Below are positions 17,601 to 44,017 of a DNA stretch of 64,000 nucleotides, one piece after another; the stretch's first letter is position 1; each line of letters starts with the position of its first letter. The stretch is from Trichoplax adhaerens (Eukaryota; Animalia; Placozoa), in contig NW_002060943.1 of the NCBI RefSeq assembly GCF_000150275.1, positions 11,098,878 through 11,162,877 on the forward strand. Reading direction: 5' to 3'. The notes beneath the pieces were generated by a model. That model searched no databases, was not told where the DNA came from, and saw nothing but the letters and a program-made list of their open reading frames with translations. Made by a program: the position numbers and the translations under genes.

Positions 17601-20600
17601 ACAGTAATCAACTATTATCCTATTAGAACTGAATAGATGCGATGATTATCCCTGCTTAAATTATGGCACGTGTCAACACCTCGGACGCAATAAATTTACG
17701 TGCCATTGCTCTGAAGAATATACTGGAACTCTATGCCAAATTAAAGGTGCCAAATATCTACTGAAGAAATCATAAAATATCAATTTATGTATAATCATTA
17801 CATGAGATATGAAATCTAGATGTAATTTATAATCTTAGTATCTTCTATCATGAACATATTGAAAACTTTGAAGATTCGTAGACTTATTTAAATAGCGCTG
17901 GTATATTTTGGACCAGATACTTCTTACATTTTTCTATCTTGCATTCCTAAAATGAATCATTATCCTAAAAATTTTGCAAATTTAATTTAATGATAGGTAA
18001 TCAAGGTACCATGGGTAAAAAATTTGCTTTTCCAGTTTCTAGTAAGAGTTTTTTCGAGATTATAATAACTTTCCACGAACCAGGCGTGGTAGATATTAAT
18101 GCGATCTATAAGCACTTTCTTCCATACCAGATAAAGTCCAAATCTGCTGCTACATTTACCGTGAGGGATATTAAAAGGAACTTTTCTAATAACATTAGCC
18201 AGCTAACACGTAGAATAGTTGAAATTGAAGATCAGTCTATATTTACAAGAAACTTTGACGAAGTTATCTATATCAATTCTACAAATCCAATCAGTGTATC
18301 TATTCATGACATGGGTACAGAAATATTCCGAAAAATTGTTTTAATGCTGCCTAAAGCAACTGCCGCGAAGCAATACATTATCCCATTAAATTCAATAATT
18401 AACAGCGGGTCTAACTTTTATTTGCTGACTCTGGAGGAAAATACTACTATCGATATTGACTATTTCGGCAATCGTGATCAAATGCAATCAGAATGGACTA
18501 CCCGACCTAATTCATATACACTGATTCCTGTTAATGCTACAAATTCGCTTAACAATACTGCTAGAATTACAACATCTAAACCTATCTTTGTATTCTTAGC
18601 AAGTACCAATCATAATCCAGATATGACATCAACTCCAAACTTTATGGCTGGTCCTACTATATCCTTGCAAATACCTCCTATATCATCACTTGGGCAAGAT
18701 TTCATCATGACAGAATTGCAAAATAATGATACGCACATCAATCTTGTTACGCCGTACAATGAAACTATCATTACTATTAATGGCAATCAATTCAATATAA
18801 GCAAGATTGGCGGCAATCTTCAATTTAAATTACTGCTTGCAAGAAAATTCGAGATAATTGATCAAGAGCATATTCTATTACCTGATACGCTTTATCTACA
18901 ATGTAGTAAACCGTGTTTACTTCTTTCTAGCCGTAATACGGATATAAGTTATGTAAATATGATGACAACAGTAACATCATTTGTTCAAGCTATTAAGCAC
19001 TTTTCTAACCGTTACTGGATTTCTAATGTTAACTCCTTTATAAGTGGCTTAACACTTATAGTACCAAGTAATGAAACTAATGGTTTACGATTAAGGCAAG
19101 CAAGATTAAACTCCAGTAATTGGACTGTCCTTAATGGAATTGACTATTCTATTATCAAGCTAGATAGAAAACTAGATCGTCTAACCGCAAATAGTGAAAT
19201 TTATCACGTTAATCGTAATGTAAAATTTAGCATGCTGCTTAGTCTAAGTACTGATTTCGTGTTTACATATTTGCCTCGCTTAAATCTATTGCCACATAAA
19301 ATTTATTGCGTCAAAGATAATCCTTTGCCAGGAGATAAGTTTGATAATGATTGTGATGGGAATATCGACGAAGAGATTTTTAATGGGGTAGATGATGATC
19401 AAGACGGAAAAATTGACGAAGATACCCAAAGTATACCGAGCATTAGTTTATCATCTTCAATTACCTCGTATTCATGTGCTGATATTGCTGAAAGCCTTAA
19501 AAGTATTTCTGACAAGCCAAAAATAATTACACCGCCATATTGCCCTCTATATATTCACAATCAAACAAATAATGTTAAAATTACTTACGTTGATTCTAGG
19601 CCAATCCTTAATGGATGTCAATACGAATTACGCAGGACGTGGTCATTTATAGATCACTGCAGGAACCAAATTATAAAAACCCAGACTATCAATATCTTAC
19701 TTGCAAATTATAATATTTCTTGGCCAGAAGATATTAGAAGTGATCGTTGTCCGTATAACAGCAGTAACGATGATGATAAACCGCAGGTTCGATTTTTAAC
19801 CAGAAATTGCAGACAAGATGTAATGAAGCTGGTAACCATAACCCACCGAAATATTACTCGTCTTTATTGTAACCCATCTATCATTAGAACTTGGACCCTT
19901 CGTCTTAACTTTTTTTGCAACATAACGAGAACGCACAATCAAACAATTAGTCTGTTAGCGGAAAAAGGTTAAAAAATTTAATCAGTTAATAAAAAATCTA
20001 CTGATGGATGATTATATTCTTAAATGTAAAATCTTAAAGAAATATTACCTTTTTCGTAAGAAAATTTAAACCATGAGGCAGCAAGTTATTGCTAACTATA
20101 CAAGTATTATTAATTAATTTCGTTGGTATGAATTGCAGAGAATTATTACATATTCTCTATTTTATTATCGGTACTTTCCAATTTAGATCCGTTGACTTGT
20201 AAGTCTCTCTGCTCTAACAATGGCACTTGTCAAAATATACGCAATAGTCATCGCTGTCTATGCCAACCAGGATATACTGGTTCATCCTGCGATGAAGGTG
20301 AAATGTAGCCAAAAATTCTTAGTCTTAACATGAAGATTCGATATAATTCAGAGCCATGATAAGTTGGATAACTATAGAACTAAAATAAATAACACAATAT
20401 CTCTAACCCTTGACGCTAACTACCAGTATCTTTCAAATAGAAATTAGCAAATGCGCCTTACTCAAACCATGCAAAAACTACGGCCGGTGTACGGATCTGT
20501 TTAACGATTACCGATGTAGTTGCAATCAATATTATACAGGAAAAGACTGTGAGGAAGGTAAATTTTATTTTTCAGTTCTAACCTATATTTTTAAATTCAC

Positions 20601-23600
20601 TTCGATAAACATAGTATATACCGCGTACTGTGGTAACTTCCTATAGTACTGTAGGTGCTATATAACCATAACGGTAATACCTTACTGAGTCAATTTTTTT
20701 TTTAAACTTGATATAATATTTATCATAGATATCAACGAATGTCGCCTTAATCCATGCCAAAATAATGGCCGATGCATTAATATTGAACGAGGATATCGAT
20801 GTACTTGTCCGCCTAAATTTGAAGGGCCAACATGCGAAAAAGGTAATTAGAATTAGAATTACGAGCCTAGTTTGATTATCGATGGTCCATTGCATTTGTT
20901 CGTCAAACATTCGCAGATTAGAAATATACCGATATTAAAAGTTTCTTCCTTGTCGGTATCTCATTTTCTAATAGAAATTATTGGAGAAATCACGACTTGC
21001 AAAGCAGAAAATTCTACCGTGTTCTGGAACGAAACTCTAGCTGGCCGCATCGCATATGCTAAATGTCCACCTGGTAGTGCAGGTATCATTTGGATAATCC
21101 TCCTTTAGTGTTCACATATAATGTATATGAGTATACCATAATTGTGGGACTCTATCTTAGCTAGACTTGATTTATTGCTTATAAAATATCGATCTTGGCG
21201 ATGAATAAGCAATAGCACTCTCCGTCTAAAATTAAAGTGCTCCCATAACTAATTCCTGTATACTCGTTATCATCATTTTCTTTATTAGCACATTTGATTC
21301 TAATGTGCAATGCGTACCCTTTTGCTCTGTTATCCTTTTACTTTACTATTGAATATGATTTGAATTATTTACAAATTGGTAAAACAAAGATTTAAGACCA
21401 GCTATATTTCTAAACAGATCTATCGATAAATCACCGTGCTTATTAATATATCTAAATCATTGCCTATACCTACCATTTCTATTAAATGGAATAGAATTTA
21501 TTGACTGATAGTGTGCAATAAGGTAGCCACTTAGTGCTTATCACGAGTAAATAGCACGATTTATCTAAAAACAAGATCATAATTTGCCCGCATATTCATC
21601 AGAAGTGAACAAATCTTGATTGTGTATCCGATCGATTCAGTATTAAATCTGTAGCCCCATCATACCTTTATATAACAAAGAATTGATTAATTAAATATAA
21701 ATTGTCTCTGCATCAATTTCATTAATTTTATGTTTCAGGTTTAGCAAGCAGATTGTGTAAAAATTCTTCAACACCTGCTTGGGATATTCCTGTTTTTACT
21801 GCCTGTACATCACCTAAATTTAATTCATTACAAGATAAAGCAAGTATCAAGCTAAATTGGAATTTATTAAAATTGCTTTAATATTTTTATCTAATTGATC
21901 ATTTATCTATTGCGACTAGATCGCGAACTTACAAAGTAACAAAAGCAATATTGGTGAAGTTACCCGAGAATTAGTTAACATTACAACAGTTTCTAAGGAT
22001 AAACCTTTATTGAGTGGTGATATTCTCGTAGCAACAAATATATTAGAAAACGTTCTAAATGCAACTACAAACGATAAGCAGCCGACAGATGATGAAGTTG
22101 AGGTTAATAAGCGATCATCATTGTTTTGTATCTTTAACCTCAATCTCTTCATAAGCTTAAATTACTATCCGATTGAGTAATTTTAAAAGTATATTGGATC
22201 AAATTTGATGCTGATACCCTTGAATTACTTCAAAATTTTCAAAATGTCATTTTTTCGTAGTCTTTTATTGAATCCTCAAGTAACATTGTTCATCAAGCCA
22301 ATAAAGAATCGTGGAAGGAAATTGACGATGTAAGGAGAGTAATTTAAAGTACTGGAAGGCGTTTATCGTAAATTTTATGTGCACAGTAACAATATTTTGT
22401 AAATATCTAACGTAAAAGGTATATATGATATTTATAGTTTTTCATCCTTTCTCGCTCCTTCTACAAACACGTTTCAATATTAAATGATTATCATAACATT
22501 TAACTCAGAAAAAACCCAGCCAAGGGATTATGAAAGTCACAGAAATAATTACAAGTTATGTAATGAAAAAAGAAATGAAAGAAAATGAAACCAGCTTTGT
22601 GGTTGTTTCTGAAAACATTGGTAATTATCAATTCATAACATTGTCCTTTTCAATTCGAAAGGATTCTTTGAGTTTAGCAAATAACTTTTGATCCAAATTT
22701 ATAGCTTTATTTTGTTATATAACAGCCTTGATTCGTAAATCTTGCCCGCTACGATAAATGTTTTCCAGCAATCAGTAAATTTCTTCGTTGCGGTCCATTA
22801 TTCTTTTAGTTGCTATGATATAAAATGAAATTGATTTTTATACCTTTTATTTACAGTTTATCTAAGTTTATGATAACTAATACCGCAATGACAGAGAAGA
22901 ATTTCTGTATTTATAGTATCGAAATAAAGGTAGCTACATTATTTTAATATCTGAGAAAATTGTTTTATTTTAGTTTTAGAATCTAAAGTAATACCTCCTA
23001 CGGCCAATCAAAGTTATCAGTTTCGGCCATCAGCTCTAGGTGGAACTGGAAAACAAAAGGATACTAGCAGTATTACGCTGCCAGGAGGAATTTTCCAACG
23101 AGAAGGTACTGTATATTTTAAAAATTTTAACATAGAAAGTATATTTTGATTACTTTGTAGCCTTAAATCATAATAATTAAAACCTAATTTGATCCTATTT
23201 CCAATTCTCTCCATTGCAATCTAATAGGTTATAATGGTTCCATCAAGGTTATTAGCTTACTGTTTACCTCTATCAGTGATATCTTGGATACTAAAAGCAG
23301 GTTTTTAAAAGCTTTTGAAATTGTACGGCATCAGATAAATGACTCGATTTAGCGCAGCTTATTACATATAGACATTTACGCACTTCACTTTTATGCAGTA
23401 TTTACTAGTAAATTGTCTATACATTCATTAAATTAATTGAGAAACAGAATAAAAAAGTATTAATCACGTTATTTTATTTCTAGCAATAAAACTCCAAAAG
23501 TCAATTCGGATATTATTTCGACTACTGTGGATCCAAAATTAGACAAAATATTGAAAAATCCAATCGTCATTGTTTTGCAACATGAAAATTATGTAAATTC

Positions 23601-26600
23601 GATTTTTATTAAATTATTGACTGAATTTGCTGAGTAGACTAATTTAATATAAACACAAAATTGATTCTTTTCATTATTTCCACTATAAAGACATCTTCCA
23701 AAGATAACACCTCTTGCGTGTTCTATAACTTTGATATCAGGTTATTTTAATTAAGCAACTGGAACTTAAAGCTTATTCTATACAATATCTTGACAATATT
23801 AATTAAACGAAGAAATATCTCTTCTGTCAAATTTTTTATGGCGACTAATTTATACTGAAGAAAGATCACAATGTCTACGGTCACGCTGAAATTAATGTCA
23901 GTTAATACACTTATTAATACTATTTAGCTCTTGGGATACCAGTGGATGCAAAGCTAATTTCACCAACGAAACACATACAATCTGTCACTGTGATCACTTG
24001 ACGAATTTCGCAGTCTTAGTTAGTCTCCGTGGAGTTTCCGTAAGTTGAAATACTAAATTAGGCAATTTTTTATTTATGTAGCAAAATTAATTTCATCTTA
24101 GGTCACTCTCCTAAAATCTAGCAATCAATGGCTATACTATACATCGTAGATTTATGGCTTATCGTCTAGCTGAAATCCTATAGTGCTGTCGCTTTACTTC
24201 TAATATTAATATTAAAAGTTTATGAAGCCTTTCTTCAGAATTAGATCATCATAGTATTGCTTGCCCTTCAATATTGAAATGATCGCTACGATTCATATCT
24301 TTGAATTATCGTTAGATAAAGTTCCTTTCAAGCATTATTAGTCGCAGCAGATATGCATAGATTTGCATGTTTGGTCTTCATATTTTTAAAACATAAAATC
24401 TATAAGTGTACACTACATATTTCTAGATCAAGTAGGAGCGATTAATATTTAAGGATGCGACAGGATAATTCTAATCACATTACTTTACGATACACGGCAT
24501 AAATGCATATAATTTATGCGTATAAACTGATTATCTCAAACGCTATATATTAAGGTTTATTAGTGGCCAAAATAGCACCTTTCGTTTCCAGCACAAAGTT
24601 ATTAATATGATAATGTCAGTAACAGCCACGGACAATTCGCAAACCCCACGTACTACTCTTTTTTCAAATACTCGCGCTATTTATTTACTGGTATATACTC
24701 TTGAGCGAATATCTAAAATCATGCTTGTGCTATCTTTAGATTATATTATGATAACTTAACCTTACATCATTAAGACAAACTGTAATGCGACAGAAGTGAT
24801 TTAGATTATGAGTTTCAATTACTGGCCCTACTTGCTATTCAAGTCAAACAATGTTTATACAGATCTTTTATCCTTTAGTTCATATATTATAGGCTATATC
24901 ACGATATAAGATTTCTAAAGTGTTTGTTGTCCTATTCAATTCACATTTTGTTCTGAACTGGATTGCTTCCTGCAGGAAAATCCGGAGATTCGATTATCAT
25001 TGGAAATTCTATCTTACATAGGCTGTGGGCTCTCTATCATTGGCCTCCTCATTACTATCTCCGTTTACACTTATTACAGAAGGTTAATTATTACAGGAAA
25101 TATCTTATTTGCCTAAATATTTATTTAGAACAACTCGAGTTTTTTCGAATTTTAGGTTTGCTAAATAGGTATTTTTTTCGTTTAATCTAGTCGCATAAAG
25201 TCCCCAAACACGGTAATCCATTTAAATTTATTTTCCTGCTTACTACTGGTCAATATTATTGTTGTTGCTGGTTTGCAAAGAACAGAAGTAACGGTAAGTA
25301 TAATGCTAAACATACTAATTGAAAGAAAAGGCATAAATCGGTTTCAGCTTATCATTTCGATATTCCCTAAACTAATCCTTAGACGTATCATTGCTACCTT
25401 AATTAATTAACACAAGCTCAGCTGCAGTAATGAAATCTTTTAGGATCTCTTCATTCATAATTAATTGCTATCCCTAATTATTTATTTAATTAGTCGAATA
25501 ACTTGCTTCATTAATACAAGCTTTACTGTAATTATGGAACCCTTTACGACCTCTCCGTTCTTGTCGTATTCTTAATAGGTTATCTGCATCATTATGGCTG
25601 CTTTACTGCATTATCTACTTCTTGCAGCCTTCATATGGATGCTAATAGAAGGCATCAACTTATATCTTATGCTAGTTAAAGTTTTTGGAGCCAAGATAAA
25701 ACTATACTTATGCTATGCGGCAGGCTACGGTAAATTATTTTTAGCATTAATACTTTAATTTATAAACGACTATTTCATCTAGACAACTTAATGAAAAGAT
25801 TAATTTCATATCTTAACAAAATTTTAGCTTTTGAAAGAGTAAATTGATATAAAGATATTACAAATTCCTCTTTCTTTGACTAGGAATTCCGGCAGTTATT
25901 GTTGCTGGCACGCTTCTTTCTAGTGGTTTGACTATCGGCTTGGAAAATTATACTATGAACTCCACGTCAGTAATATCTAATACATATTACGAATGTATTA
26001 TTGAATGTTACGGTCGATAATAGTCACTAACTAGTTACTGATCAATTTTAATACACGAATTCTATAATTTAGGCTTCGAATCAGTAGATTAAATGTCACT
26101 TTAATACAAGATTGCGTCCGTTAGTTACAGCAATCACACTTTCTTTAAAATTTAAGCGAGGTCAAATTAAAAAAATCTCACCCTTACAATAAAATGATAC
26201 TCAATAAGCGATAGTATTTCAATACCAAGCAAAAATTAAAATACTAGCAAGCTTTAAGATTTTATATTTTTAGGCAAACCTTTTCCAACTAGTATTATAA
26301 ATTCCCAATTTACTAGCGCAATTTTTTTATTTTGGACAAAGGGTAGATTAAAATGGTGTTAATATTTTATTATATTTCAGATGTTGGCTAAATAACGATC
26401 CACCTGTTATTCTGGGATTTATGGTTCCCGCTGCAGCAATTATTTTAGTAAGTATACTATATGCAGCAAATGTGTATGTGTATTTGTACTCGGTATTATA
26501 TATAAGAGGGTGATTACAACTAAATAAATTAAATGATTTTCTCTACTCTACTGATACGCAGTAGAATGATAGTGTATCTATTTCTGATTAAAGCAAACAA

Positions 26601-28538
26601 GATTCTATAAGTAATTAATTGTATTTATTTAGTACATAAGAGAAAAAGTTACATTATGAAAAAATAATTTACGTGTACATATCTTAATGCTAAATGAATC
26701 TTTTATTTTAGGCGAATTTTATCTTTTTCTTTTACGCACTAAAAGTAATGTTATCGCCGACAAAGATTAGTAAGAACCAACAAGATAGAAGTAAAATCAA
26801 GTGCGTTAATAAATTGCGCGTATGAATTGATAGTTGTTATTTCTATTTTACTAAAGCTTCATTTTTAGTATCTGAATTGTATTGCAAACTATATTTGGAT
26901 AATTATCTTGTGCGGCGAATTAAGTATGCTAATGTTAAAATAAATTAGAGTTGGCTTGAGAGGTTCTGCTGTACTATTACCCCTTCTTGGTGTGGGCTGG
27001 ATATTGGGATTTCTAGCTGCGAATGAACATTTAGAATTTTTCAAATATCCATTTGTGATTGCCAATTCGCTACAAGTAAATGAGATGCTTTATTCGTTAA
27101 CGTTTAATAAATATATAGATCTACGTGATTTATTAATTTTATTTACTTTAATCTAGGGCTTCTTCATTTTTTTATGCTATTGTATCTTCAATACACCGGT
27201 ATTTATGCTTTATATCTTTGTAGCATTAATAACTACTTAATTATGCCACTATCCGGTTTCACTTAACAAGATATCATGAAGTAATCCCGTGCTACTCTAA
27301 CTAGAAAATTTAAATCATACCAATAATTTTCTACTGTAGTACCCTTAACATTATAATCGAGACTGTTTATGATATTTACTATATAGAAAATACTAGAAAA
27401 TTATTAATTTACTTACCCAGTTAGTAATTTGAAAAGTTTACTAACTTCACTGCACAGATATGTCTTAATACGGTTTCTTAATGCGAAGGCATTGGCTACG
27501 AAGTGATGTAGCAATGTTCTACATTTTCTGTTCATTGGTATTTGTAAAATCCTATCTCAAGCAAATGCCACCAAATAATATTTAACAGTTATTTTAGCAT
27601 GTTCTTACCGCAGAAAATATCGACTGAATCTATAAAGTTACTGAAATATAACTGAGACTTGATACACTTAGTATATTCGTCATACTGTTTCTAATCTGCT
27701 TCTTTCTCATTTAGGTTAATATACTCGTAAATAGTTTCACCCATATCATGAACTTTCCATTCAAATAATGTCTACCCTACTATCTACAGAACTTCATTTC
27801 ATTATCATAAACCGATATGGATATTTTATGCTCAAAAATCTTGTAGCGACATACTGATATTTCGCAATTAATGATGCCATATAATAATATATATCTAATC
27901 AAAGTTTTCTAGGTTTACTTAAAAATAAATATATTGGTAGTTACCATACCTTAATCCTCAATTACTAAAATTTACCTTACTGTAGTCACATTTCAGTACT
28001 TTGATATACTTGAAAACGATCATAAATTATTTTCCTATCATTAGCAGCCTTTTCGATGACGCATTATCATTTTAATAATGCTACCACTATTTATACCTGA
28101 GATAGCTCAACTTGTGTAAATTATAAAATAACTTTTATCTTAACATTGATAGGTAAGGGAAGCAATAAAGAGCAGCTCGAAGGGATCTAAAGTAGATTCA
28201 CATTCTGGTGGAATGCGCTCGCGTTATGAAAAGTAAGTTATTAATTCGTAAGGTTTCTAAATGTTTCCTTATCTACGATGGCTGAATTATAATCTTCACC
28301 TATTAGATAGTCGTAGATTAGAGATAACCTAGAATATTACTTAAAATTTTCTTTTTGTCATATTGAAGCTACCATGTCACTTAACTATTTATTGAACCAT
28401 TTCTAAGATAATCTTTATTAATTTATTAGACAAACAAATGGGCTACCCTCAAGAATGACTAGTAGTTCGTCGCTATCTACATTCGGCAAAGACGTCATTA
28501 GCATGAACACAAAGCAAGCTTTAAATAAGAAACATTAA
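11681..28538 (+). CDS. Adhesion GPCR 1: signal peptide - Cys-rich - CUB - 14 EGF - IgGFc-binding/DNDCDG repeat/HYR-like - 3 EGF - HormR - GAIN/GPS - 7TM (secretin-like)
   Basis: Signal peptide across exons 11681-11734 and 12134-12206 ([30 protein letters not shown]). CUB exon about 12763-13101. Phase-1 EGF exons at about 13190, 13837, 14212, 14423, 14964, 15487, 15759, 16031, 16316, 16584, 16938, 17131, 17358, 17627, 20187, 20441, 20729. Large exon 17997-19967. HormR ([16 protein letters not shown]...[10 protein letters not shown]), GPS WDTSGC...CHCDHL|TNFAVL (23995-24018), TM motifs [16 protein letters not shown] and [12 protein letters not shown]; stop at 28536-28538. Confidence 0.9.
15480..16735 (+). 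repeat. Tandem duplication of an EGF exon + intron unit (about 272 bp, 5 copies)
   Basis: Exons encoding D(I/V)(N/D)[26 protein letters not shown] start at 15487, 15759, 16031, 16316 and 16584. The introns (gtaaaacgagaaagacgataaattagacttagtatctc...) are near-identical. Confidence 0.95.
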
Positions 28539-32699: not shown

Positions 32700-34836
32700 G
32701 TAGGGGGAAATATTGAACGACAGGGCACATGGTAAATTAGTCCGGGCTTAATTTCTATCGGTAAGCAACTTGGTTGAACGTTTAGGATATAAATTTCAAT
32801 TTTCGAAATAACTAAACAAGAAGAATGTACAAGCAAGTTTATAGGTAATAAATGAGCCTACTCAGTGATAACTAAGACAACTTTTCTTTTTACTCAATCC
32901 AACAGCTTGGTTGCAAGGTGGAAAACAATCTGATTAGGGTGAGTATGAGCATCCTGAGATAAATTTTGCTGTCATTTATATTATAATAATGCAAATGAAA
33001 GGCTACTAGCATCGATGAAAACTAAATCTTTTATGTTAACAGGAAAAAACTACAAGAATAATCAAGCTGCAACATTCTTATAGTTGATCATTAGCTTATC
33101 GGGAAGGCAAAATAAGTAAATTAGGTAGGGATACAGTAAACTACTTTACCGTGTTTATTTAAATCGAGGTAATAGAAAATCTTCTACCGATGTATAATAG
33201 AAAAATTGAATTTGTTAATAAGAAATTAATTTGGCTAATAGAATCGTTCGTATAATATTCAACGCCAAGCAATTTAAACAAGCATGAATTTAATAATAAT
33301 CTTATTTGGTTCTATTTGATAAATGAACCTGTTTAAAGCTTAATCCAAACCAATTCTTGATAAATTCTTGCTACTACTAGATTCGTGAAGCAATTTCCTT
33401 ACCAATTAAAAGACAGATGGCGACGAGTAGTACTTCCTGTTTACTTTCATTCATTTTGGTGATTCTTTGTTGCGTAAGTACCGTATTAGACCAAAGAAGT
33501 TCAATTTTGGCTATATATTCATACAGTTTTACTAATACAAACAACGAAATGCTATAAGCTTGGATGTTAATGGCTATTACAAAGTCTAGAAATAACAGAA
33601 AATAGTCAATTGAATGAGTAAAAATTAAGTTATAATGCATCCCAGGTTTTTTTTCAAGGTTAGCAATAGCTAACGCCCACATACCATCTGGTATAGCCAT
33701 AGTAATATGAGATACCAGTCGTTAAAAAGCCAATAATCGTCGGCGAACAAATAATTTAATTTTAAGATACTTGATTTAAGTACTTCTTTTTGGAAAGATG
33801 CGATGCTACTTTAGCTAATACTACGCTTAGATCATACAGTATTTTATAATACAACAAACTATCATTAGTAGCAAATAAATTGAATACATCAGCAGAGTAA
33901 TTTTATTCAAAATTTACCTCTACAGTAGACGAACAGTAACGGATAGATCGCCGTGTAATATTTGGCTAAGCACTCTAGTCTACCTAAATTAAAGAAAAAA
34001 CCTTCTTTTATGGAAATATACAACCTTATCGATTACATAAATATCATGGCTATCACTCAATAGGCTCCATTCGTTTTCAATGGTACCTTAATGAACATAC
34101 TCTAACTGTTCAAATCAAGGAATCACTTAATATTAACAAAGCATTATAAAGTTAGGATATGATATGATTATAGTTCAATTTACAGTATTTTTCCTTATAA
34201 GCATTCAAGTGCAGTAGTTTTACGAACATACAGTATATTACTGAAAGATTACCTCAGCTATAGTCACGGAAAATACTGAAACTATACTACGCCTTTAGTG
34301 CTTTCCATTGATTTATACATATAATGTATTATTGCTATTTTGCACTTGAACAATTATTAAGAGTCCACATTAGTTAAGTCTATCCAAGTTTCAGCAATTT
34401 TCTCAGATGTATTAGATGATATACTTAAAAGTACTACTTTCGGCTATTAATTAAATCCAATCAGCCTTGTACACTAGTGTCTATCATTAAATTATGTAAA
34501 CTTCTTCATAGTCTTTGCACATTAATAACTAGAAATTAAAAAAACCGAGGCATAATGCATAGAAATTTCTTCTATTATTATTTAATCCTTTGCTCGTAAG
34601 AATGACAATTACATCACTACAGAGATTTCTAGAGCAAATCAATAAATGGTAGCATATTCTTGACATCCATTGTAAATAATGCATTCTACTACTAGTACTA
34701 GTTCATTTTTGTAACAGAATTTTAGTTCTATTCTCGCTAATGTACTACTATTCTCCTGTACAACAGTCAGTAATTTTCTATTATGAATTACTATCATGCT
34801 GTTAATTTGTTATCGCTATACTATCTTTAAAATCAG

Positions 34837-37800
34837 AATGGCATGATAACTGTATCTGTCGGCGCTGCATCTGATAATCCGTCAGGTAAGATAAGCAATA
34901 GCATATTAAATGACATGATCATAAAAATCATGTTGTGATTACCCAAAATTTCATTACAGTAAAACCTTAATTACCTTGCGTCTTATATGTCAAGATTTAG
35001 TTGCTAGAACCCGAGTTCATTCTAACTTTGATGATAGAACACTATAACATTAATTTCTAGATTCTGGTAACTGCTCAAAAACTTACCATCATTTCTCAAA
35101 TACCATTGCCTCACCGAACTTCCCGGATAAATATCCCGTTTTGTCTAATTGTTGCTGGAAGATTATACTAAACAACACGCAATCGATCTTTTTTCGGTTT
35201 TTGGCTTTCAATGTTGAATATCGTCTTCGATGCGCCTTTGATTATGTCATGATATCACCAGGTAGTACTGCAAATAAAACCTGTGATGACATCGCGGCAA
35301 CATCTAGCAGTTCAGCGATGTGCGGAAACAATATACCACCTCCGGTACAAATCAATAGTAATATCGTCTACATCAACTTTCATAGTGATTCTGTCAATGG
35401 AGATAATACTGGCTTTCAGTTAAAATATGAAGGAGGTAATCTTAAATTCTGTTATTGAATGCATTAAATAAGCTCAAATGTTTTAAATTAAAATTCAATC
35501 TGATATATCGAATCAATTTTTATAGAAGGATATTGTCTTATACATAAATCATGTAATTAGATGTTACCCTATTTATATAGAACAATTCAATTTGTGTATA
35601 TTGCTGCTCATGAAAAGCACAGTTACACTAAAGTGATATAAAGTTCATGATAGTGTTTTTTCACTTACCATAACCTTAATGAGCAATTTGATATTTTAAC
35701 TATCGAAAAATGATGCCTTACTAGGTAGATAATACGTAGTTACTATTTACTAAATCTTATGCTAAGTCGTTAACTTAATAATGAATAACTTTTTAGCATT
35801 TGGGCCAGATACAACTAAACTTTATGCAATTGGAGTGCCAAATCAAGTTGGAAATACTTATCAAGTAGTCGAGGGTAAAACTTTTAGTCTAGTATGTCAC
35901 TTTCAAGTTGCAGTTGAAGGAATTGATTTCCAATGGTATCATCGCAAGAATAATTCTTCATCAGTTTCAATTATGAACACACAATCGGATATTTCAATCT
36001 ATTCAAATAGTACAACTTCTATAATAACTATTCCCAGTATGCGGTCTGTTGACTCTGGAATTTATACCTGTAATGCATCAACAGCATTACAATCGATCAA
36101 GCTTAGCGCCAATTTGAATTTTACACCACAGCCAACCACTAAACCCCTATCAACAGCTCCGAGTATGGTTCCTACATCGTCTGTTGCGACTCAATTTACC
36201 GTAGAATCACTCTCTTGTCCAACAGAAGTGAAAGAGAAAATTTTGTGGCCTGCCACTACAGTGGGGAAAATTGCCAAAATAAAATGTATTCCACCATCTG
36301 AAGGTAAACAGACACTTCATTCTATTTTAGCAATGTCTATGTAAAAATAAAGAAAGAAAGCAATGAAAAACATAAGACATGATGTATAAATGACATCATA
36401 TTCCTATACCTTCTCGAGATGCTGACAATAATCTCGGTGTACTAGTCGATAATCATAAAATATTCGTACGTAGTCATAGATTTCAAGATTACCGTAATAT
36501 TTACTGCGTTTGCAGGTCTCGCTTTCCGTCAATGCTTACCGTTATCTAATGGCGCTGCAACATGGGACATTGTTGATACAACTCGATGCACGACTTTAGT
36601 ATTTGTGGAACTTAATGCTAAGGTATGTAGAAAGGATAAAACTCGATATTTGGCTGTGACTGGAAATAAAATATATGCAAAAATTGTGATAGTTATTAAT
36701 TATTATTCCATTTGTGGTACAGTACGCCACAGAATTATTTTTGCCTAAAAACCTTAAGAGGGTTGGCAGATTATTCGACATTACAGTATTCGCAAAATGA
36801 ACGAAATTGTATAGCAAATCTTTTATACAGTCCTCATTTAACAATCTCTCAGCATCCATTTTTAGTGATTAAAGTTATGAGAATCTTTCTTCTAACTTAG
36901 AAGAAGCAGAATTGATGTCGTAGATCGATAAACAGATGATACTTTTACTATACAAAAATTGATTGAATTTATACTTTATAGGCAAATACATCGTTAGGTG
37001 ATGAACAAGAAAAGTCACAAATACTACAAGAGCTATCGCAAATTACTGTCGCTAACAATTCGCAGCCGATCCAAGCTGGTGATATGATCATTACTAATAA
37101 TATCTTGGGTAAAATTGCTAGAGAATCGACTATCGTGACAGATATAGACCAACTTGAGGTAATACGTTGTATAATTTGTTTCATCCCATTTTTACGAATG
37201 AGAAATTCCGATAATAACTTTAGCTATAATTAAAATACTAATCGATATCTAATTTTTTTCTACATAAGGAATCTTTTTATTTTAAATATTATAGGAATAT
37301 CGTAGCTAACAGTAAACTAATTAGTATTGGATATATGTGCACTCTACTGTAGTTATCTAAGTTAATAACTCACGCCTTATCATATCCACCATACGTTTAA
37401 AAATTATCTAATTTCTATCAGTGCGCAAAAATACAGTTCTACTTTCGGCCATAATCGTCGTATAATGATTTAGATATAGTATGTCTCTAATACATAATTT
37501 ATTAACGTGATTATATCCGATTAACTTAGAATTTCCTTGTGACCAGCAATAACTTGCTTGATAATAGCAACAAAGAACAATGGAGAGCAATATCGGCTGT
37601 AAATACAACAATAACATACGCTTATTATTCATGCTTGATCAACTGATATGTTAGAAGCCTGTCAAAATCAATATTAGTCAGTAATTGATGTAGTTATGTA
37701 ACAAATATTAGAAACAACCTGGTGCAGCAGAAACCATTCAGAATCTAGATTTATTTGCTGGCAAATACGACTTGAGAGACACATATGAATTAACTCTGAC

Positions 37801-40800
37801 CCTACCCAACCTTGGTAAGCAATTTTCTTCAAATTTTCGATATTAGTGTTAATCCACGTAACCAAGAGTCTTACTAAAGTTTGCGTATATGTCGCAAATT
37901 TAACACTGTCCAAGCTCGTTACTTTTTATGACCATCCAGTAAATAATACATTCTATGGTATGCATTAAACTTTGTTTTCTAGTGTTAATGGGCACTCCTC
38001 TTTAATTTTATAGTCATGACGTTATTAGATGTACCGCCTGAAGACAAACGACCAATTACTTTTCCAGCTAATGTAACGGATACATCAGTACCTTGGTGGA
38101 ACGGAAACAAAATCACATTACCTGCGGCTTTATTTTCAGGTACTTAACGTAATGTAATTTCGATTCTTTTTCTAAATATATTGCATCAGAAGGAATTATC
38201 GGTGCTGATTCTAATTTAAGAATGTATTCAAAAATTATAGATCGTGAAAGTCTTTCCAGAGTCACCAACTTCATCTATAAGTCATTAAATGAATTCTTAC
38301 CTTATTCAACTGATGACGAAACCGGTGACATGTAGGCAAAATTATAAATATCACTAAATTTAACTATAATTGCCTATATAAAACTCTTTATTATACTGTA
38401 TATTTATTGCCGTATTAAAGTTACGAGGCAATGGTTTGAATGTTTATGTACGATTTAACTCAACTCATTTAAATCACCGGATAATATTTACTTATTCTCT
38501 CATACGATTTCTAATAGTAACAATGACCCTAGTGTCATAAACTCTCAAGTAATTTCAAGTACTATTCAGAATAGAACCGTAACTGGGTCAGATCAACCGG
38601 TGGAAATAGTTTTGAGGCACCTTAAGGTCAGAAAATTTGCTATCTATTCTTAAAACTTGTTTAATTAGACATTATTCACAAAGTCTGATATTTCTTATAT
38701 AGTATTAAAAATACTGTTAACGTGAAACTAACAGTTTATTGCGGTTAATATTAATCCTAAAATTTGTAGGATAAAAATACAGCGAATACAACGCATGAGT
38801 GTGTATTTTGGAATTTTGATAACAGGTTGTTACCCATTCATGCTTACATAGCTTTGCAAATGAGAGGAGTAGATACAAAGGTTGATTGTATCTCCTTTTA
38901 TCGTTGCGAATCTATCTAAGATAGGCAAAAAATATTTCTTAGTTAGTCTTTTTAAGATGATCTAGGCGATATCTTAAACTATAACATTTATTTCATTGCT
39001 AAAGTTATATAGCTGGTGGTGACTGGTCAAACTATGGTTGCCGGAAGAATTTCTCTAACGCTACTGTAACAGTCTGCCATTGCGATCATTTAACGCATTT
39101 TGCGGTATTGGTCCAAGTCAGAAATGCTACGGTAAGAGCTTTTATTAGTAATTACGAAAGAGCTATTTTAGGGCGACCCCCTTAAACTCTCAATAACATA
39201 AATTCTTTCAATCACAATAATTCTCGTCATCATTTTATTGACTTTTATTTACCTACAGATTAGTCCACCAGTATTGCTATCACTACAAATCATTACCTAT
39301 GTGGGCTGTGGAATTTCTATCTTATGCCTCTTAATAACTTTGATTCTGTATATCATCTTATGGAAGTATGAATTCATGATTTCATTTAATTTACAAGCAT
39401 TACTTCAGAATTAGTTCTTAATTCGACTTTAAAGACTGCCTAACAATTTGTCTGCTTTTATTAATGTAGATATTTTGAAGGGAGAGTGGTTATTTTTATT
39501 CACTTTAACCTCATGTTGTGCTTACTCATGTCCAATATACTAATAGTCTCCAGCCTTGGTTTAACAAAATATAAAGTAAGAGCCTTAGAAAATATAATAA
39601 TTCAAACTAGCGAAGTTTTTCTCTATCTAATAACTTTACGTAAAATATTTATCTTAATAATTATCAAAATATTCTTTATGTTGACGAAATTATGTTTTGT
39701 ATAGAATTTAAACTGAATTCGGGTTCTTCTTTTATAGTTAATATGTACGATGACAACAGCGACGCTCCATTTTGCATTGATAGCATCCTTTATGTGGATG
39801 CTTGTCGAAGGTTTACATGCTTACATTAAAATAGTTAGGGTATTTAGCTCTGGCATTAAACTTTGGCTATATTTTATAATTGCTTATGGTAAGTGATATA
39901 TACATTAGACTTTTTAATTCTACTTTTCAACAATAAAAATCACTACAACATTCGATATATGCTATGAGTGGCTACCTTGCATATTTATGAATGCGTAGAT
40001 AAATCTATCATACAGTGATATTATTGTCCATTTTCTTACTAAATTATAGGATCCGCTCTCGCTGTCGTAGGAGCTACTATTGGAATAGCTATCTTAGCTG
40101 CAGGTTTACCAGCTTACGTTGGTACTTTCGGGTATGTTATTTCATTTGCTGGCGTAACGGTTTTACTACTCTTCAAAATACTTAGAACCGGATTAATAGC
40201 TTTCTATCCCTGAATGATTTATATAAATGACTAAACAAGTTTAAAAAAACCTTTATTAAATATTTTTATACTATTTTTTAATACATTTATTACTGCACAA
40301 ATTGCAGGTGCTGGCTATCTATCGATCCACCAATTATTTTAGGTTTCCTTGTTCCGATTGGAGTGATTATTATGGTGCGTTTAATGCTAAACCACATAGT
40401 TTCCAAATGTGGACTGTTATAGCAACGGAATAATTAAAATTCTTTTATAATTCCATGATACCTTAGATTGGTAAACCTAAATTTGTAATCGTTTTATTAT
40501 CGTTTTTAATTTTTTTTATTCGATTGCAACATAATTTTGTGAACCCTGAAAGATCAATATCATTTTCTTGATATTGGTATTGAAAGAACATATTACGACC
40601 GTTAGTAAAGCTCCTAGAAAATCAGACGATAAACAAGTCAAGTTAACGAAGTAAGTAAAATATGAAACTATTTCAATACCTTTAAAAATATTAATCTTGA
40701 TGTATTTAGGTAGTAAAAATATACCAAACATTTTATCTGATTTTAAAATCTAATTCTCATAATTAATAGCCTTAGTAGAAATAGAAATTAATAAAAGATT

Positions 40801-43800
40801 TATATTATAAAGTTTTGGAATAGTGAGTAATAATTAACAGGTAACACAAATATAAAGTCAAGTACACTGAGCTCGAATTGAAGAGAAGAGTAGTTCAAAC
40901 TCCTACCTGCACTTCTTAAATATGCTTAAATCAATTTATTTACGGCAACAAAGTTGCTTGCAATTAGACTTGAGCCATCAAATAAAAGGCTTCTCTTCAA
41001 GTTGATAATCGATATATTTTACCGTGGGTATCCACTGGATTAAGATATTATTGCTTTTCTAATACTCTCCAATGTCGAACATCTTCACAATTTCAGTACA
41101 ATAATTATTATAGTCCTTGTACCATACTTATTTAACCGACTACTATTAGTATTTAACATTGCCTAATTATATTCTCATTAAAGGCGAATAAGTACAGTTA
41201 TAATAGATTTCTCATTTTAAAAAAATTTTTAGATTGGTTATTAAAGACCTATTGATTTTATTGCCGTTACTTGGCTCTGGATGGGTATTGGCATGTCTAG
41301 TCTTTATAACTAACAATGTTATAATGCAATATCCATTTGCAATAGTGAACTCTTTACAGGTAATCAGTAAACTATACAGACTATTAAATACGATCAGCGA
41401 ATGTGATCTTGCTTATTAATATCTGTGATATCGTCCGTGTCTAATGTGGGTTTTTAATGAAATTTAAAGCCTCTAACTATACTTTAACAAAAGCTATTTG
41501 GTTATCCTTAGGGATTCTTTATATTTATATTCCACTGCGTAAGAAGTGAAAAGGTTTGTAGGAAGTAGATTCGACAATAATAATTTATAATTTGAAATAA
41601 CATTCTACTTTATCGGGGATGATGTTAGTTACAAATAATTAAATTACTTAAATAATATCTATAGTATCGTTAGGATTAATAGCCTAATAGTATTCTGGTA
41701 GAAGATCTGTCGTAATATCCGTTGTAGTCTAGTTCTAGACTATCCCACATTATTAAGTGTATATATTCGAATAGTATGTTACTCCGGTACCGTAGCATTT
41801 TATGATTGGTTCAGTGATTGAATAAGTATAATATGAAAGCTGCTTTACTTACAAACATACTTGGAAATAAATTGTAAGGCACAAGTCGGCACATTTGATA
41901 GCAAACATATTTTAAGACCAGTTTTAATCTTCAATTCTATATTCTGCTATCGTACTATTTCCTATTATAATTGAGTATATACTACTCAATGATACTCTAA
42001 TAATTTTACATGGAGTTTATTTTGAGAGCTAGTAAAGGATGAAATAGCTTTATTCACACTTTCTGTTTTATACAATATACCAAGATACGAACAAAAATAA
42101 AACCACTCATTCTGTAGTGTCTTTGTTAAAGCACTTTGTAGTAAATGCATCTGTATAGCTAAATATTTATGGCAAAGTATTAATTCCAAGCTGACTCTTT
42201 CTATATACTCACTACTGCATAAATATGTGCTGTAATTGCAGATTAAAAAACTATAGTTTTAAATCATCAAGTACCGCATAGCACGCTGCAATTGCCCTCA
42301 TAGGCTATAATAACTTTATTATAATATCATGAACGAGTTTGGGTAAGGCCAGTTAGGACTCCTCCATTCCTAAATATCTAATTCACTTCTTTTTGTATAA
42401 AGGTAAAGAAAGCATGGACTACCAGGAAAGTTAAGCGAATGAGAATAAAAACTGATATTGCAAGGTACAATAGATAAAATTGATGTAATACACCGTATTG
42501 AGTTAGTAAATTACTAACGATGAAACGATTTTATCGACAGCTATAAATTCTAACACTTAAATAATAAGTATCAAAAAAGATGAATAGCTATGAATTGAAA
42601 TGCTACTTATGGTTAGTGTTAAGCTTATTCTTATTTTAAAACAAAATTTAGAAAGCATCAAGGGCTTAGCACGCCTCAAATGACCCCTAAATCGACAACC
42701 AAATCATCGTAAGTTACATATATATAATCAGTTACAAAGGATACCACAGTTACAATTTATCTTTATTAGCAATTAGATACGACATGGATTTCATAAATAT
42801 ACAAAATTAAAAATATCTACGTTAGAAGTTTTCATTATAGTTATTTCTAAAAGATTTTAAAAAAGTAATGCTGGCACTTTTAGTAAGAGTAGTGCTTATA
42901 TTCATGCAAATTAAAGCTAATACAGACGCAATAAAATATTTAATGTTTAATTAGATCAGTAGCAGCTTCTGAAGCTCGGAAATCGCATCTTCATGGAACA
43001 AAGTTTGTGCTTGAGATTGAAGATGCGGATGATGATTCCTTGCACAGTAATCCTCAAGTTGAGCTATCTAAAGAAACTACTAATCGGTACCTAACCACAG
43101 CTCCAGCCACTAAAAATAAGAGATTGGGCAGTACCGAAAGCCTTGACCAAAATTCTAATGACCATTTGTCTATTTCTCAATCACCTTTTCATCGGTCAGA
43201 AACTAGTTTAAGCCAACGATCACGAAATTCTATTAAAAGTGTCAATTCACCAAATGACGATGAAAATGAAGACACTGACAGATTGAGTCAGTCTAACAGT
43301 CATCAATCGCGACTTTCTATTAAAAGTACGCATTCGGATGATAGCGATAGATTGAATCGATCCAATAGTCAAAGCAGCTATAAAGCCAAGAATATTGATA
43401 TCGATCCAACTAATAACGCGAATGATGATGAAACTCCAGTTATTATTAGAAATCAAATGCTAACTTTAGACAAAAATACCAAAGATGGCCAACAAGCTAA
43501 CACCAATAATACCTATTCAATAGAAGTAACCAATTTAAATCCTGATATCAGTCGTCAAGATCTAGAAGATTACTTTCAAGCTTTCGGTGCAGTCATATCA
43601 GTAGGTCAAATTAATCGTAAAACAAATAATTTGGATGGTAGGGCTAGATTATTTACTACTGTTGTCCTTAAGCTTAGCGATACTATTGAAGCGTTATTAG
43701 AGCACAACCATATCATTAATGATTGCGTAATAGCAATCCACCATCATAGCAAGCCCAGTTCAGCTACTGATCAATATAGAGTTATTGTAACTGGTCTGAA

Positions 43801-44017
43801 TAAATCCATTTCCCGTGAAATGCTTCAAGCTAAATTCTCGGAATATGGCGAAATCAGTAATATTGAATTTGATAATATCTATTTTCCAACAAGTTGTTGT
43901 ATTACCTTTAATGATTTAAATTCTTATGAGCACGCTATTAGCAAGAGACATAGCCATATTGATGGGCGTCATCGAATATCTATTATGGCTTCAACAAGCG
44001 TTAATAGATTTTTCTAA
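34837..44017 (+). CDS. Adhesion GPCR 2: CUB - Ig - S/T stalk - HormR - GAIN/GPS - 7TM - Ser-rich tail - two RRM-like domains (5' start uncertain, possibly 32577)
   Basis: CUB exon 35061-35436 (IASPNFPDKYP...CAFDYV...FHSDSVN..TGFQLKY). Ig + HormR exon about 35798-36303 (LVC..FQWY...DSGIYTC). GPS WSNYGC...CHCDHL|THFAVL (39087-39110). 7TM motifs LHFALIASFMWMLVEG and LLPLLGSGWVL. TM7 exon 41512-41553, then 42403-42464, 42652-42708 and 42955-44017, all phase-compatible. Confidence 0.88.
43514..43995 (+). other. Tandem RRM-like domains within the terminal exon of adhesion GPCR 2
   Basis: RRM1: YSIEVTNLNPDISRQDLEDYFQAFGAVISV...HIINDCVIAI. RRM2: YRVIVTGLNKSISREMLQAKFSEYGEISNIEF...CCITFNDLNSYEHAISKRHSHIDGRHRISI. 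Confidence 0.8.

What the first reader, a model, noticed from the sequence alone, without database searches (positions are those of the whole stretch)
41512..44017. Adhesion GPCR whose cytoplasmic tail carries two RRM (RNA-binding-type) domains
Seen in sequence: TM7 exon 41512-41553 (GFFIFIFHCVRSEK, phase 0) joins 42403-42464 (VKKAWTTRK..., phase 2), then 42652-42708 (phase 2), then 42955-44017. Every junction is canonical GT-AG and keeps the frame, so the receptor reads through a Ser-rich linker into two tandem RRM folds (43514-43995). Established knowledge: DLEDYFQAFGAV, KFSEYGEI and AISKRHSHIDGR resemble hnRNP A/Musashi/TDP-43-type RRMs (TDP-43 has DLKEYFSTFGEV and SQRHMIDGR), and aGPCR tails are normally unstructured with at most a PDZ ligand. 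I know of no characterised GPCR-RRM fusion. Inference: this could be a receptor that couples adhesion or mechanical sensing (intact HL|T GPS and THFAVL Stachel) to membrane-localised RNA capture or local translation, or that releases an RRM fragment after cleavage. Caveat: RNP2/RNP1 aromatic residues are largely replaced (SIEVTNL, RLFTTVVL, VIVTGL, SCCITF), so these may be protein-binding pseudo-RRMs.
Basis: partly seen in the sequence, partly recalled or inferred. Interest (0 to 1): 0.92.

Follow-up and report, generated by a model that had tools for sequence, protein, structure and literature searches.

The report
Adhesion GPCR with RRM-pair tail
In the simple animal Trichoplax, an adhesion-type G-protein-coupled receptor gene continues past its last membrane helix, across three conserved introns, into a cytoplasmic tail that ends in two RNA-recognition-motif folds. 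The gene model is already in public databases, but I found no paper that describes or tests it.

Summary
The window is Trichoplax adhaerens DNA.

- **RRM domains.** The last exon has two RRM_1 domains above Pfam's threshold. They fold as two beta-alpha-beta-beta-alpha-beta units and match tandem-RRM structures. The nearest sequence kin is hnRNP D-like.
- **Conservation.** Two deeply diverged placozoan-like genomic contigs keep all four tail exons, splice sites and phases, while their introns are near random. dN/dS is 0.12-0.17 on the RRMs. No start codon is conserved in position, so a stand-alone RRM gene is unlikely.
- **Paralogs.** A second Trichoplax adhesion GPCR (H2 RDD41314.1) has the same layout. 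The closest paralog keeps the tail exons but stops before any RRM.
- **Distribution.** None of the 120 listed adhesion-GPCR relatives outside Placozoa lists an RRM, and no paper I could search describes one.

RNA reads could not be obtained, so splicing rests on comparative evidence and existing annotations. Most canonical RNA-stacking aromatic residues are replaced, so RNA binding is unproven. Verdict: a real, placozoan-specific new variant of an adhesion GPCR, already deposited but uncharacterised. The scan did not report it on other DNA.

The parts
33635..44017 (+). Whole gene TRIADDRAFT_52620 (XP_002108297.1): 23 exons as mapped from the public protein. Architecture: CUB, Ig, HRM, GAIN/GPS, 7TM, linker, RRM, RRM.
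   Evidence: Exact mapping of P0003 on the window; Pfam domains; names and accessions.
38770..39131 (+). Two exons that carry the GPS motif (HL|T followed by HFAVL), protein residues 557-617.
   Evidence: Pfam GPS 55 bits at residues 566-610; exon mapping; sequence.
39259..41553 (+). Exons of the seven-transmembrane domain (7tm_2, protein residues 624-867).
   Evidence: Pfam 7tm_2 136 bits; exon mapping.
41512..41553 (+). Exon for the end of TM7 (14 codons, phase 0 at both ends).
   Evidence: It is 100% identical at protein level in L003 and L004 although dS is saturated.
42403..42464 (+). Basic membrane-proximal exon (VKKAW...), probably helix 8. It is 62 nt long and ends in phase 2.
   Evidence: Same length, phase and GT/AG in L003, L004 and the paralog P0156.
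42652..42708 (+). 57-nt tail exon (…GLSTPQMTPKS…), phase 2 to phase 2.
   Evidence: 83% protein identity to L003 and L004 against near-random introns; dN/dS 0.06-0.19.
42955..44017 (+). Last exon: linker, two RRMs and the TAA stop at 44015-44017.
   Evidence: The acceptor AG is at the same codon position in three lineages. An in-frame TAA lies 4 codons upstream of the acceptor.
42956..43510 (+). Disordered Ser-rich linker of about 185 residues, with conserved short motifs (ASEAR, NKRL, ISIS.SPFH.S).
   Evidence: pLDDT below 50 for residues 1-183; invariant columns; dN/dS 0.23-0.35.
43511..43744 (+). RRM1. RNP2 position 2 is Glu. RNP1 keeps Arg at position 1 and Phe at position 3, with Thr at position 5. 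It ends in an invariant His triplet.
   Evidence: Pfam RRM_1 27.4 bits; fold; alignment to hnRNP D-like; dN/dS 0.06-0.19.
43778..43990 (+). RRM2. All three canonical aromatic positions are replaced (Ile, Ser, Cys), but it keeps the C-x-I-T-F pattern of hnRNP D-type RRM2.
   Evidence: Pfam RRM_1 28.4 bits; fold; alignment; dN/dS 0.12-0.18.

Best explanation
This is one real gene. It encodes a placozoan adhesion GPCR (CUB, Ig, HRM, GAIN/GPS, 7TM) whose cytoplasmic tail is a basic helix-8 segment, a disordered Ser-rich linker of about 200 residues, and a tandem RRM pair derived from an hnRNP D-like gene. The RRM pair is held at the inner face of the plasma membrane on a flexible, probably phosphorylatable tether, and most likely serves as a docking module for a partner. 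In this gene most RNA-stacking aromatic residues are replaced, and those replacements are themselves conserved. I therefore think a protein or RNP partner, or non-canonical RNA binding, is somewhat more likely than classical single-stranded RNA binding. Shown: the architecture, the fold, conservation and purifying selection, and a second paralog with the same layout. Inferred: membrane tethering, phospho-regulation of the linker, and the nature of the ligand.
For: - **Junctions and frame:**
- **Gene models:** identical to XP_002108297.1. The same tail is in the evidence-based MAKER model RDD41204.1 of Trichoplax sp. H2, which differs upstream by one extra exon.
- **RRM domains:** above the Pfam cut-off. 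The AlphaFold2 fold matches tandem RRMs in Foldseek.
- **Other lineages:** contigs L003 and L004 keep the four tail exons, GT/AG and phases. Intron identity is 46-54% and dS exceeds 1.
- **Selection:** dN/dS is 0.12-0.17 on the RRMs, 0.06-0.19 on the 57-nt exon and 0.23-0.35 on the linker.
- **No stand-alone start:** no ATG is conserved in position upstream of RRM1.
- **Paralog P0156:** it has the homologous TM7, helix-8 and 57-nt exons, and a last exon that starts at the same point but stops after 53 codons. The junction into the last exon therefore belongs to the receptor tail itself.
- **Second gene:** a second adhesion GPCR with an RRM-pair tail lies at G000:C1408, matching H2 RDD41314.1.
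- **Common origin of the two tails:** both share a 3-residue insertion and an F-T-T pattern in RNP1, relative to hnRNP D-like.
Against: - No RNA reads were obtained, so the splice junctions rest on gene models and comparative genomics.
- The H2 annotation was given T. adhaerens UniProt proteins as evidence, so it is not fully independent.
- The organisms behind L003 and L004 are unnamed. I call them placozoan-like by similarity only.
- Degenerate RNP motifs do not exclude RNA binding; from general knowledge, PTB and qRRM domains bind RNA without the canonical aromatic residues.
- Net charge and pI do not discriminate.
- Nothing here shows a ligand, a localisation or signalling.
Confidence: 0.75

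Rival explanations
1. Classical RNA capture. The tail RRMs bind single-stranded RNA directly, so the receptor tethers specific mRNAs or RNPs at the membrane and couples adhesion or mechanical signals to local RNA fate.
For: The domains derive from a true RNA-binding family, hnRNP D-like. RRM1 keeps Arg at RNP1 position 1 and Phe at position 3. The paralogous tail (RDD41314.1) keeps more canonical residues: Tyr in RNP2 of RRM1, Phe in RNP1 of RRM1, Tyr in RNP1 of RRM2, and an RRM1 pI of 9.7. Purifying selection acts on both RRMs.
Against: In this gene five of the six canonical aromatic positions are replaced, including a conserved Glu at the centre of the RRM1 sheet, and RRM2 lost all three aromatics plus the basic RNP1 residue. 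There are no binding data.
Confidence: 0.25
2. Gene-model artefact. The receptor ends before 42955, and the RRM exon belongs to a separate neighbouring transcript that gene predictors merged with it.
For: No RNA reads were seen here. The 2008 model is a prediction, and the H2 pipeline was given that prediction as evidence. The 57-nt exon contains a conserved Met that could start a soluble product from an internal promoter.
Against: No start codon is conserved in position for the RRM exon; T. adhaerens has a stop 4 codons before the acceptor and its first ATG at codon 168. About 150-185 linker codons stay open, from exactly the conserved acceptor, in three lineages. Phases are conserved. The RRM-less paralog uses the same junction. 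A second receptor gene has the same layout.
Confidence: 0.08
3. Released effector. After receptor activation the tail is cleaved, and the RRM fragment acts elsewhere, for example in the nucleus on RNA processing.
For: A long disordered linker would be accessible to proteases. The ancestral family, hnRNP D-like, is nuclear (general knowledge).
Against: I identified no cleavage motif or nuclear localisation signal, and nothing here bears on cleavage.
Confidence: 0.05

Closest known systems
Adhesion GPCRs (class B2) of the latrophilin / ADGRL-ADGRD-like group
   Same: 7tm_2 domain, GAIN/GPS with HL|T, adhesive ectodomain modules (CUB, Ig, HRM), and a basic helix-8 segment after TM7.
   Different: A folded tandem RRM at the end of the cytoplasmic tail. 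None of the 120 listed relatives outside Placozoa lists PF00076.
hnRNP D / hnRNP D-like (AUF1-type) tandem-RRM proteins
   Same: Two adjacent RRMs with the same spacing. Best PDB sequence match is 7zir, E 2.8e-8. The paralogous tail is about 33% identical to hnRNP D-like proteins. The C-x-I-T-F pattern of RRM2 is shared.
   Different: Fused to a membrane receptor rather than soluble. No Gly-rich C-terminal region. Most RNP aromatic residues are replaced. There is a 3-residue insertion after beta2 of RRM1.
GPCRs with a folded cytoplasmic domain fused to the tail, including the Trichoplax LRR-GPCR-pseudokinase genes noted by this scan and, from general knowledge, Dictyostelium RpkA and plant 7TM-RGS1
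   Same: A seven-helix receptor carries its own intracellular module in one polypeptide (scan notes s1-764952 and s1-739311, not checked here).
   Different: Those modules are kinase-like, lipid-kinase or RGS domains. Here it is an RRM pair, for which I found no precedent.
Pseudo-RRMs and protein-binding RRMs (general knowledge: UHM domains, Y14 in the exon junction complex)
   Same: RRM fold with degenerate RNP1/RNP2 aromatic residues.
   Different: By inspection of the alignment, I saw no R-x-F motif after helix 2 as in UHMs. No partner is known.

Membership tests
Adhesion GPCR (class B2) | Secretin-type seven-transmembrane domain (Pfam 7tm_2) | tested here: met
   136.3 bits at residues 624-867 of P0003.
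Adhesion GPCR (class B2) | GAIN domain with GPS motif (HL|T) directly before TM1 | tested here: met
   GPS 55 bits. GAIN scores 71.8 bits in the H2 model P0152, which includes one more exon. HLT followed by HFAVL is in the sequence.
Adhesion GPCR (class B2) | Autoproteolysis at the GPS and tethered-agonist activation | not testable with these tools
   Needs protein biochemistry.
RRM (Pfam PF00076) | Profile match above the curated cut-off | tested here: met
   27.4 and 28.4 bits for the two domains separately, against a cut-off of 20.7.
RRM (Pfam PF00076) | beta-alpha-beta-beta-alpha-beta fold | tested here: met
   AlphaFold2 secondary-structure order, with block-mean pLDDT mostly 65-89. Foldseek probability 1.00 to tandem RRMs.
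RRM (Pfam PF00076) | Canonical RNP2 and RNP1 aromatic residues on beta1 and beta3 | tested here: not met
   RRM1 has Glu, Phe, Thr. RRM2 has Ile, Ser, Cys at the three positions. Only one of the six is aromatic.
RRM (Pfam PF00076) | Binds RNA | not testable with these tools
   Needs EMSA, RBNS or CLIP.
hnRNP D-like (2xRBD-Gly) family | Soluble protein with two RRMs followed by a Gly-rich region | tested here: not met
   The protein ends 8 residues after RRM2 and sits on a 7TM receptor. I read it as derived from this family, not as a member.

The most novel reading that the evidence does not exclude
A small placozoan family of adhesion GPCRs carries a functional RNA-binding module on the receptor tail. 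Cell contact or mechanical activation would then directly control which mRNAs or RNPs are held, translated or released at the plasma membrane. This would be the first GPCR with an intrinsic RNA-binding domain.
Probability: 0.25. Interest if true: 0.85.

Novelty: new variant of a known kind. Interest (0 to 1): 0.62.

Why it matters
GPCR tails are usually disordered scaffolds for kinases, arrestins and PDZ proteins. A receptor that carries a conserved RRM pair would link surface sensing to RNA or RNP biology within one polypeptide, in an animal without neurons or muscles. The fusion is found in at least two paralogs. It is conserved across deep placozoan splits and under purifying selection, so it is not a one-off prediction error. 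It offers a defined test case: does a membrane-tethered, partly degenerate RRM pair bind RNA or protein? A natural RRM-less paralog is available as a control. It also adds to signs that placozoan GPCRs often acquired folded intracellular modules.

Tried and rejected
- **Metagenome scan:** a scan with the tail alignment found no relative, so no spliced environmental transcript and no further lineage.
- **Full-length orthologs:** a search scoring the tail within proteins of 698-2222 aa returned only the Trichoplax cluster.
- **Literature:** searches for the accessions, for adhesion GPCR plus RNA recognition motif, for 7tm_2 plus RRM_1, and for GPCR plus RRM domain found nothing relevant.
- **Single-cell atlas:** the stored (cut) supplement text of the 2023 placozoan cell atlas does not contain gene number 52620.
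- **Promoter/terminator scan:** the bacterial-type scan is irrelevant for an animal gene and showed nothing above shuffles.
- **Charge and pI:** the RRM values do not discriminate, because hnRNP D-like RRMs cut at the same boundaries are equally acidic.
- **PARP14-type RRM:** weak, with the single domains below the cut-off. I did not file it there.
- **Third receptor tail:** a single-sequence AlphaFold2 model of the third receptor's C-terminus had low confidence (pLDDT 49), so that RRM call stays tentative.
- **One mis-framed reference** was rejected by protein comparison.

Full report
**Source and setting.** The window lies in an assembly of 105.6 Mb in 1414 contigs. Its proteins are named Trichoplax adhaerens by NCBI and UniProt. 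GC content is about 31% throughout.

**The observation.**
- Each exon begins after AG and is followed by GT.
- Exon lengths of 42, 62 and 57 nt give end phases 0, 2, 2, so the frame runs into codon 42956 and stays open for 353 codons to the TAA at 44015-44017.
- A search of 1.84 billion representative proteins with the RRM region returned a 1270-residue protein that is 100% identical over its last 193 residues.
- That protein is XP_002108297.1 / TRIADDRAFT_52620 / UniProt B3RJG8. Its 90% cluster also holds RDD41204.1 of Trichoplax sp. H2, named "Adhesion G protein-coupled receptor B3".
It maps to the window as 23 exons from 33635 to 44017.
- I made no hand-joined model. Exons were searched by reference, and the only joined sequence used is this public protein.

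**Domains.**
- Pfam finds CUB, Ig, weak HRM, GPS, 7tm_2 and two RRM_1 stretches in the public protein.
- The two RRM halves each pass the curated cut-off when scanned alone: 27.4 and 28.4 bits against 20.7.
- AlphaFold2, run on the last exon with a five-sequence alignment, leaves residues 1-183 disordered. It builds two beta-alpha-beta-beta-alpha-beta units with block-mean pLDDT mostly 65-89.
- Foldseek matches tandem-RRM structures (hnRNP A2/B1, CUGBP1, HuR, TDP-43, PABP) at probability 1.00.
- The best PDB match by sequence is hnRNP D-like (E 2.8e-8), followed by PABP, hnRNP D0, Hrp1, hnRNP A/B, SRSF1 and TDP-43.

The case therefore rests on three kinds of evidence.

1. *Existing annotations.* The 2008 prediction and the evidence-based MAKER annotation of H2 both give the fusion. 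The H2 annotation was built with Trinity and Cufflinks transcripts, but also with T. adhaerens UniProt proteins as evidence. The H2 model differs upstream by an extra 23-codon exon, so it is not a plain copy.

2. *Two other genomic contigs.* L003 comes from Logan and L004 from ENA. Both are about 29% GC and carry the TM6-7 exon, the TM7 exon, the helix-8 exon, the 57-nt exon and the last exon, in the same order.
   - The GT and AG sites and the phases match the window's. The acceptor of the last exon is at the same codon position.
   - Against T. adhaerens, dS is above 1 and intron identity is 46-54%.
   - The TM7 exon is 100% identical in protein, the 57-nt exon 83% and the RRMs 66-67%.
   - dN/dS is 0.12-0.17 on the RRMs, 0.06-0.19 on the 57-nt exon and 0.23-0.35 on the linker.
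   - No start codon is conserved in position. T. adhaerens has a TAA four codons before the acceptor and its first ATG at codon 168. L003 has an ATG only inside the intron, and then none until RRM2. L004 has ATGs at codons 83 and 141.

3. *Paralogs.*
   - The own-genome search with the RRM pair found one other locus, on contig C1408.
   - Upstream of that RRM exon lie GPS and 7TM exons, and a consistent in-frame path of tail exons.
   - The H2 protein RDD41314.1 (1638 aa; CUB, weak Ig, HRM, GPS, 7tm_2, two RRM_1) maps there at 90-100% identity across exons, 98.5% on the last exon.
   - The closest paralog of the window's gene is RDD38518.1, 60% identical over the GPS-7TM region. It has homologous TM7, helix-8 and 57-nt exons, and a last exon that starts at the same point. 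That exon stops after 53 codons, and no RRM lies within 7.7 kb downstream, a stretch that includes an N gap. The junction into the last exon is therefore part of the receptor tail itself.

**Origin of the tail.**
- In a maximum-likelihood tree of the GPS-7TM region, seven placozoan receptors form a clade (support 100/99).
- The window's gene pairs with RDD38518.1 (100/100).
- These two group with the upstream neighbour RDD41205.1 and with the second RRM-tailed gene, with moderate support (87/87).
- Both RRM tails share a 3-residue insertion after beta2 of RRM1 and an F-T-T pattern in RNP1, relative to hnRNP D-like proteins. Both keep the C-x-[IL]-T-F pattern of hnRNP D-type RRM2.
- I read this as a single capture of an hnRNP D-like RRM pair, followed by losses. 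With sequences this short and divergent, that remains an inference.

**Distribution and literature.**
- Among the 120 listed relatives of the GPS-7TM region, only the two Trichoplax genes list PF00076.
- None of the 150 best RRM hits has a 7TM region, apart from the gene itself.
- A tail-scored search among long proteins returned only the Trichoplax cluster.
- A metagenome scan found no relative.
- Six literature searches and four papers read gave no description of a GPCR-RRM fusion.

**How it may work.**
- *Shown:* the fold, the tether and purifying selection.
- *RNP motifs:* aligned to hnRNP D-like, RRM1 has Glu at RNP2 position 2. In RNP1 it has Arg at position 1, Phe at position 3 and Thr at position 5. 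RRM2 has Ile, Ser and Cys at the three aromatic positions, and Pro at RNP1 position 1. These replacements are invariant in three lineages.
- *The paralogous tail* keeps more canonical residues.
- *Charge* does not discriminate.
- *Inference:* the RRM pair is a membrane-tethered docking module. For this gene a protein or RNP partner, or non-canonical RNA binding, is somewhat more likely than classical RNA stacking. The conserved Ser-rich motifs of the linker look like phospho-acceptor clusters, but I did not test this.

**Verdict.** It is already deposited as a predicted protein, but I found no description of it in the papers I could search. It is restricted to placozoans as far as these searches reach. 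Function is open.

Noticed in passing
L005:394-9998 (minus strand) = G000:C1408:1730393-1739997: A second adhesion GPCR with a long Ser/Lys-rich linker and two RRMs in its last exon. It matches H2 protein RDD41314.1 (1638 aa; CUB, Ig, HRM, GPS, 7tm_2, RRM x2). Its RRMs keep more canonical RNP residues than the window's gene.
   Followed up: yes
L005:3324/3323 (minus strand): The TM6-7 exon of that second gene appears to end at a GC donor (CAG|gcaagc). The H2 model instead uses a GT 42 nt upstream, which deletes 14 conserved TM7 residues (VALQYIFAITNSLQ). Consistent with that, its 7tm_2 match stops at profile position 239 of 250.
   Followed up: partly
L013:7742-9826 (minus strand) = G000:C1397: The closest paralog (H2 RDD38518.1) keeps the homologous tail exons, but its last exon stops after 53 codons. 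No RRM lies within 7.7 kb downstream, a stretch that includes an N gap. It is a natural RRM-less counterpart.
   Followed up: yes
L014:1501-2106 = G000:C1411:6585555-6586160: A third CUB-type adhesion GPCR (P0158, annotated 'Adhesion G protein-coupled receptor L3' in Trichoplax sp. H2, 1236 aa) ends in a single RRM-like segment. Pfam RRM_1 scores 17.3 bits, below the 20.7 cut-off. A single-sequence AlphaFold2 model has the right order of strands and helices but a pLDDT of only 49.
   Followed up: partly
window 11681-28535 (+): The upstream neighbour on the same strand is another adhesion GPCR with a large EGF array (H2 RDD41205.1, named Fibropellin-1). It belongs to the same placozoan clade and has a short tail without an RRM. 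It contains the stretch of scan note s1-772853.
   Followed up: partly
window 37530-37598 (+): The H2 model has a 23-codon exon that is 100% present in the window but missing from the T. adhaerens model. With it, the Pfam GAIN domain scores 71.8 bits. Without it, GAIN is not reported at E <= 0.001. The 2008 model probably skips a real exon.
   Followed up: partly
window 43736-43759 (+): A His triplet followed by S-K-P-S, at the end of RRM1, is invariant in all three lineages. Its role is unknown. Metal binding or pH sensing are only guesses.
   Followed up: no
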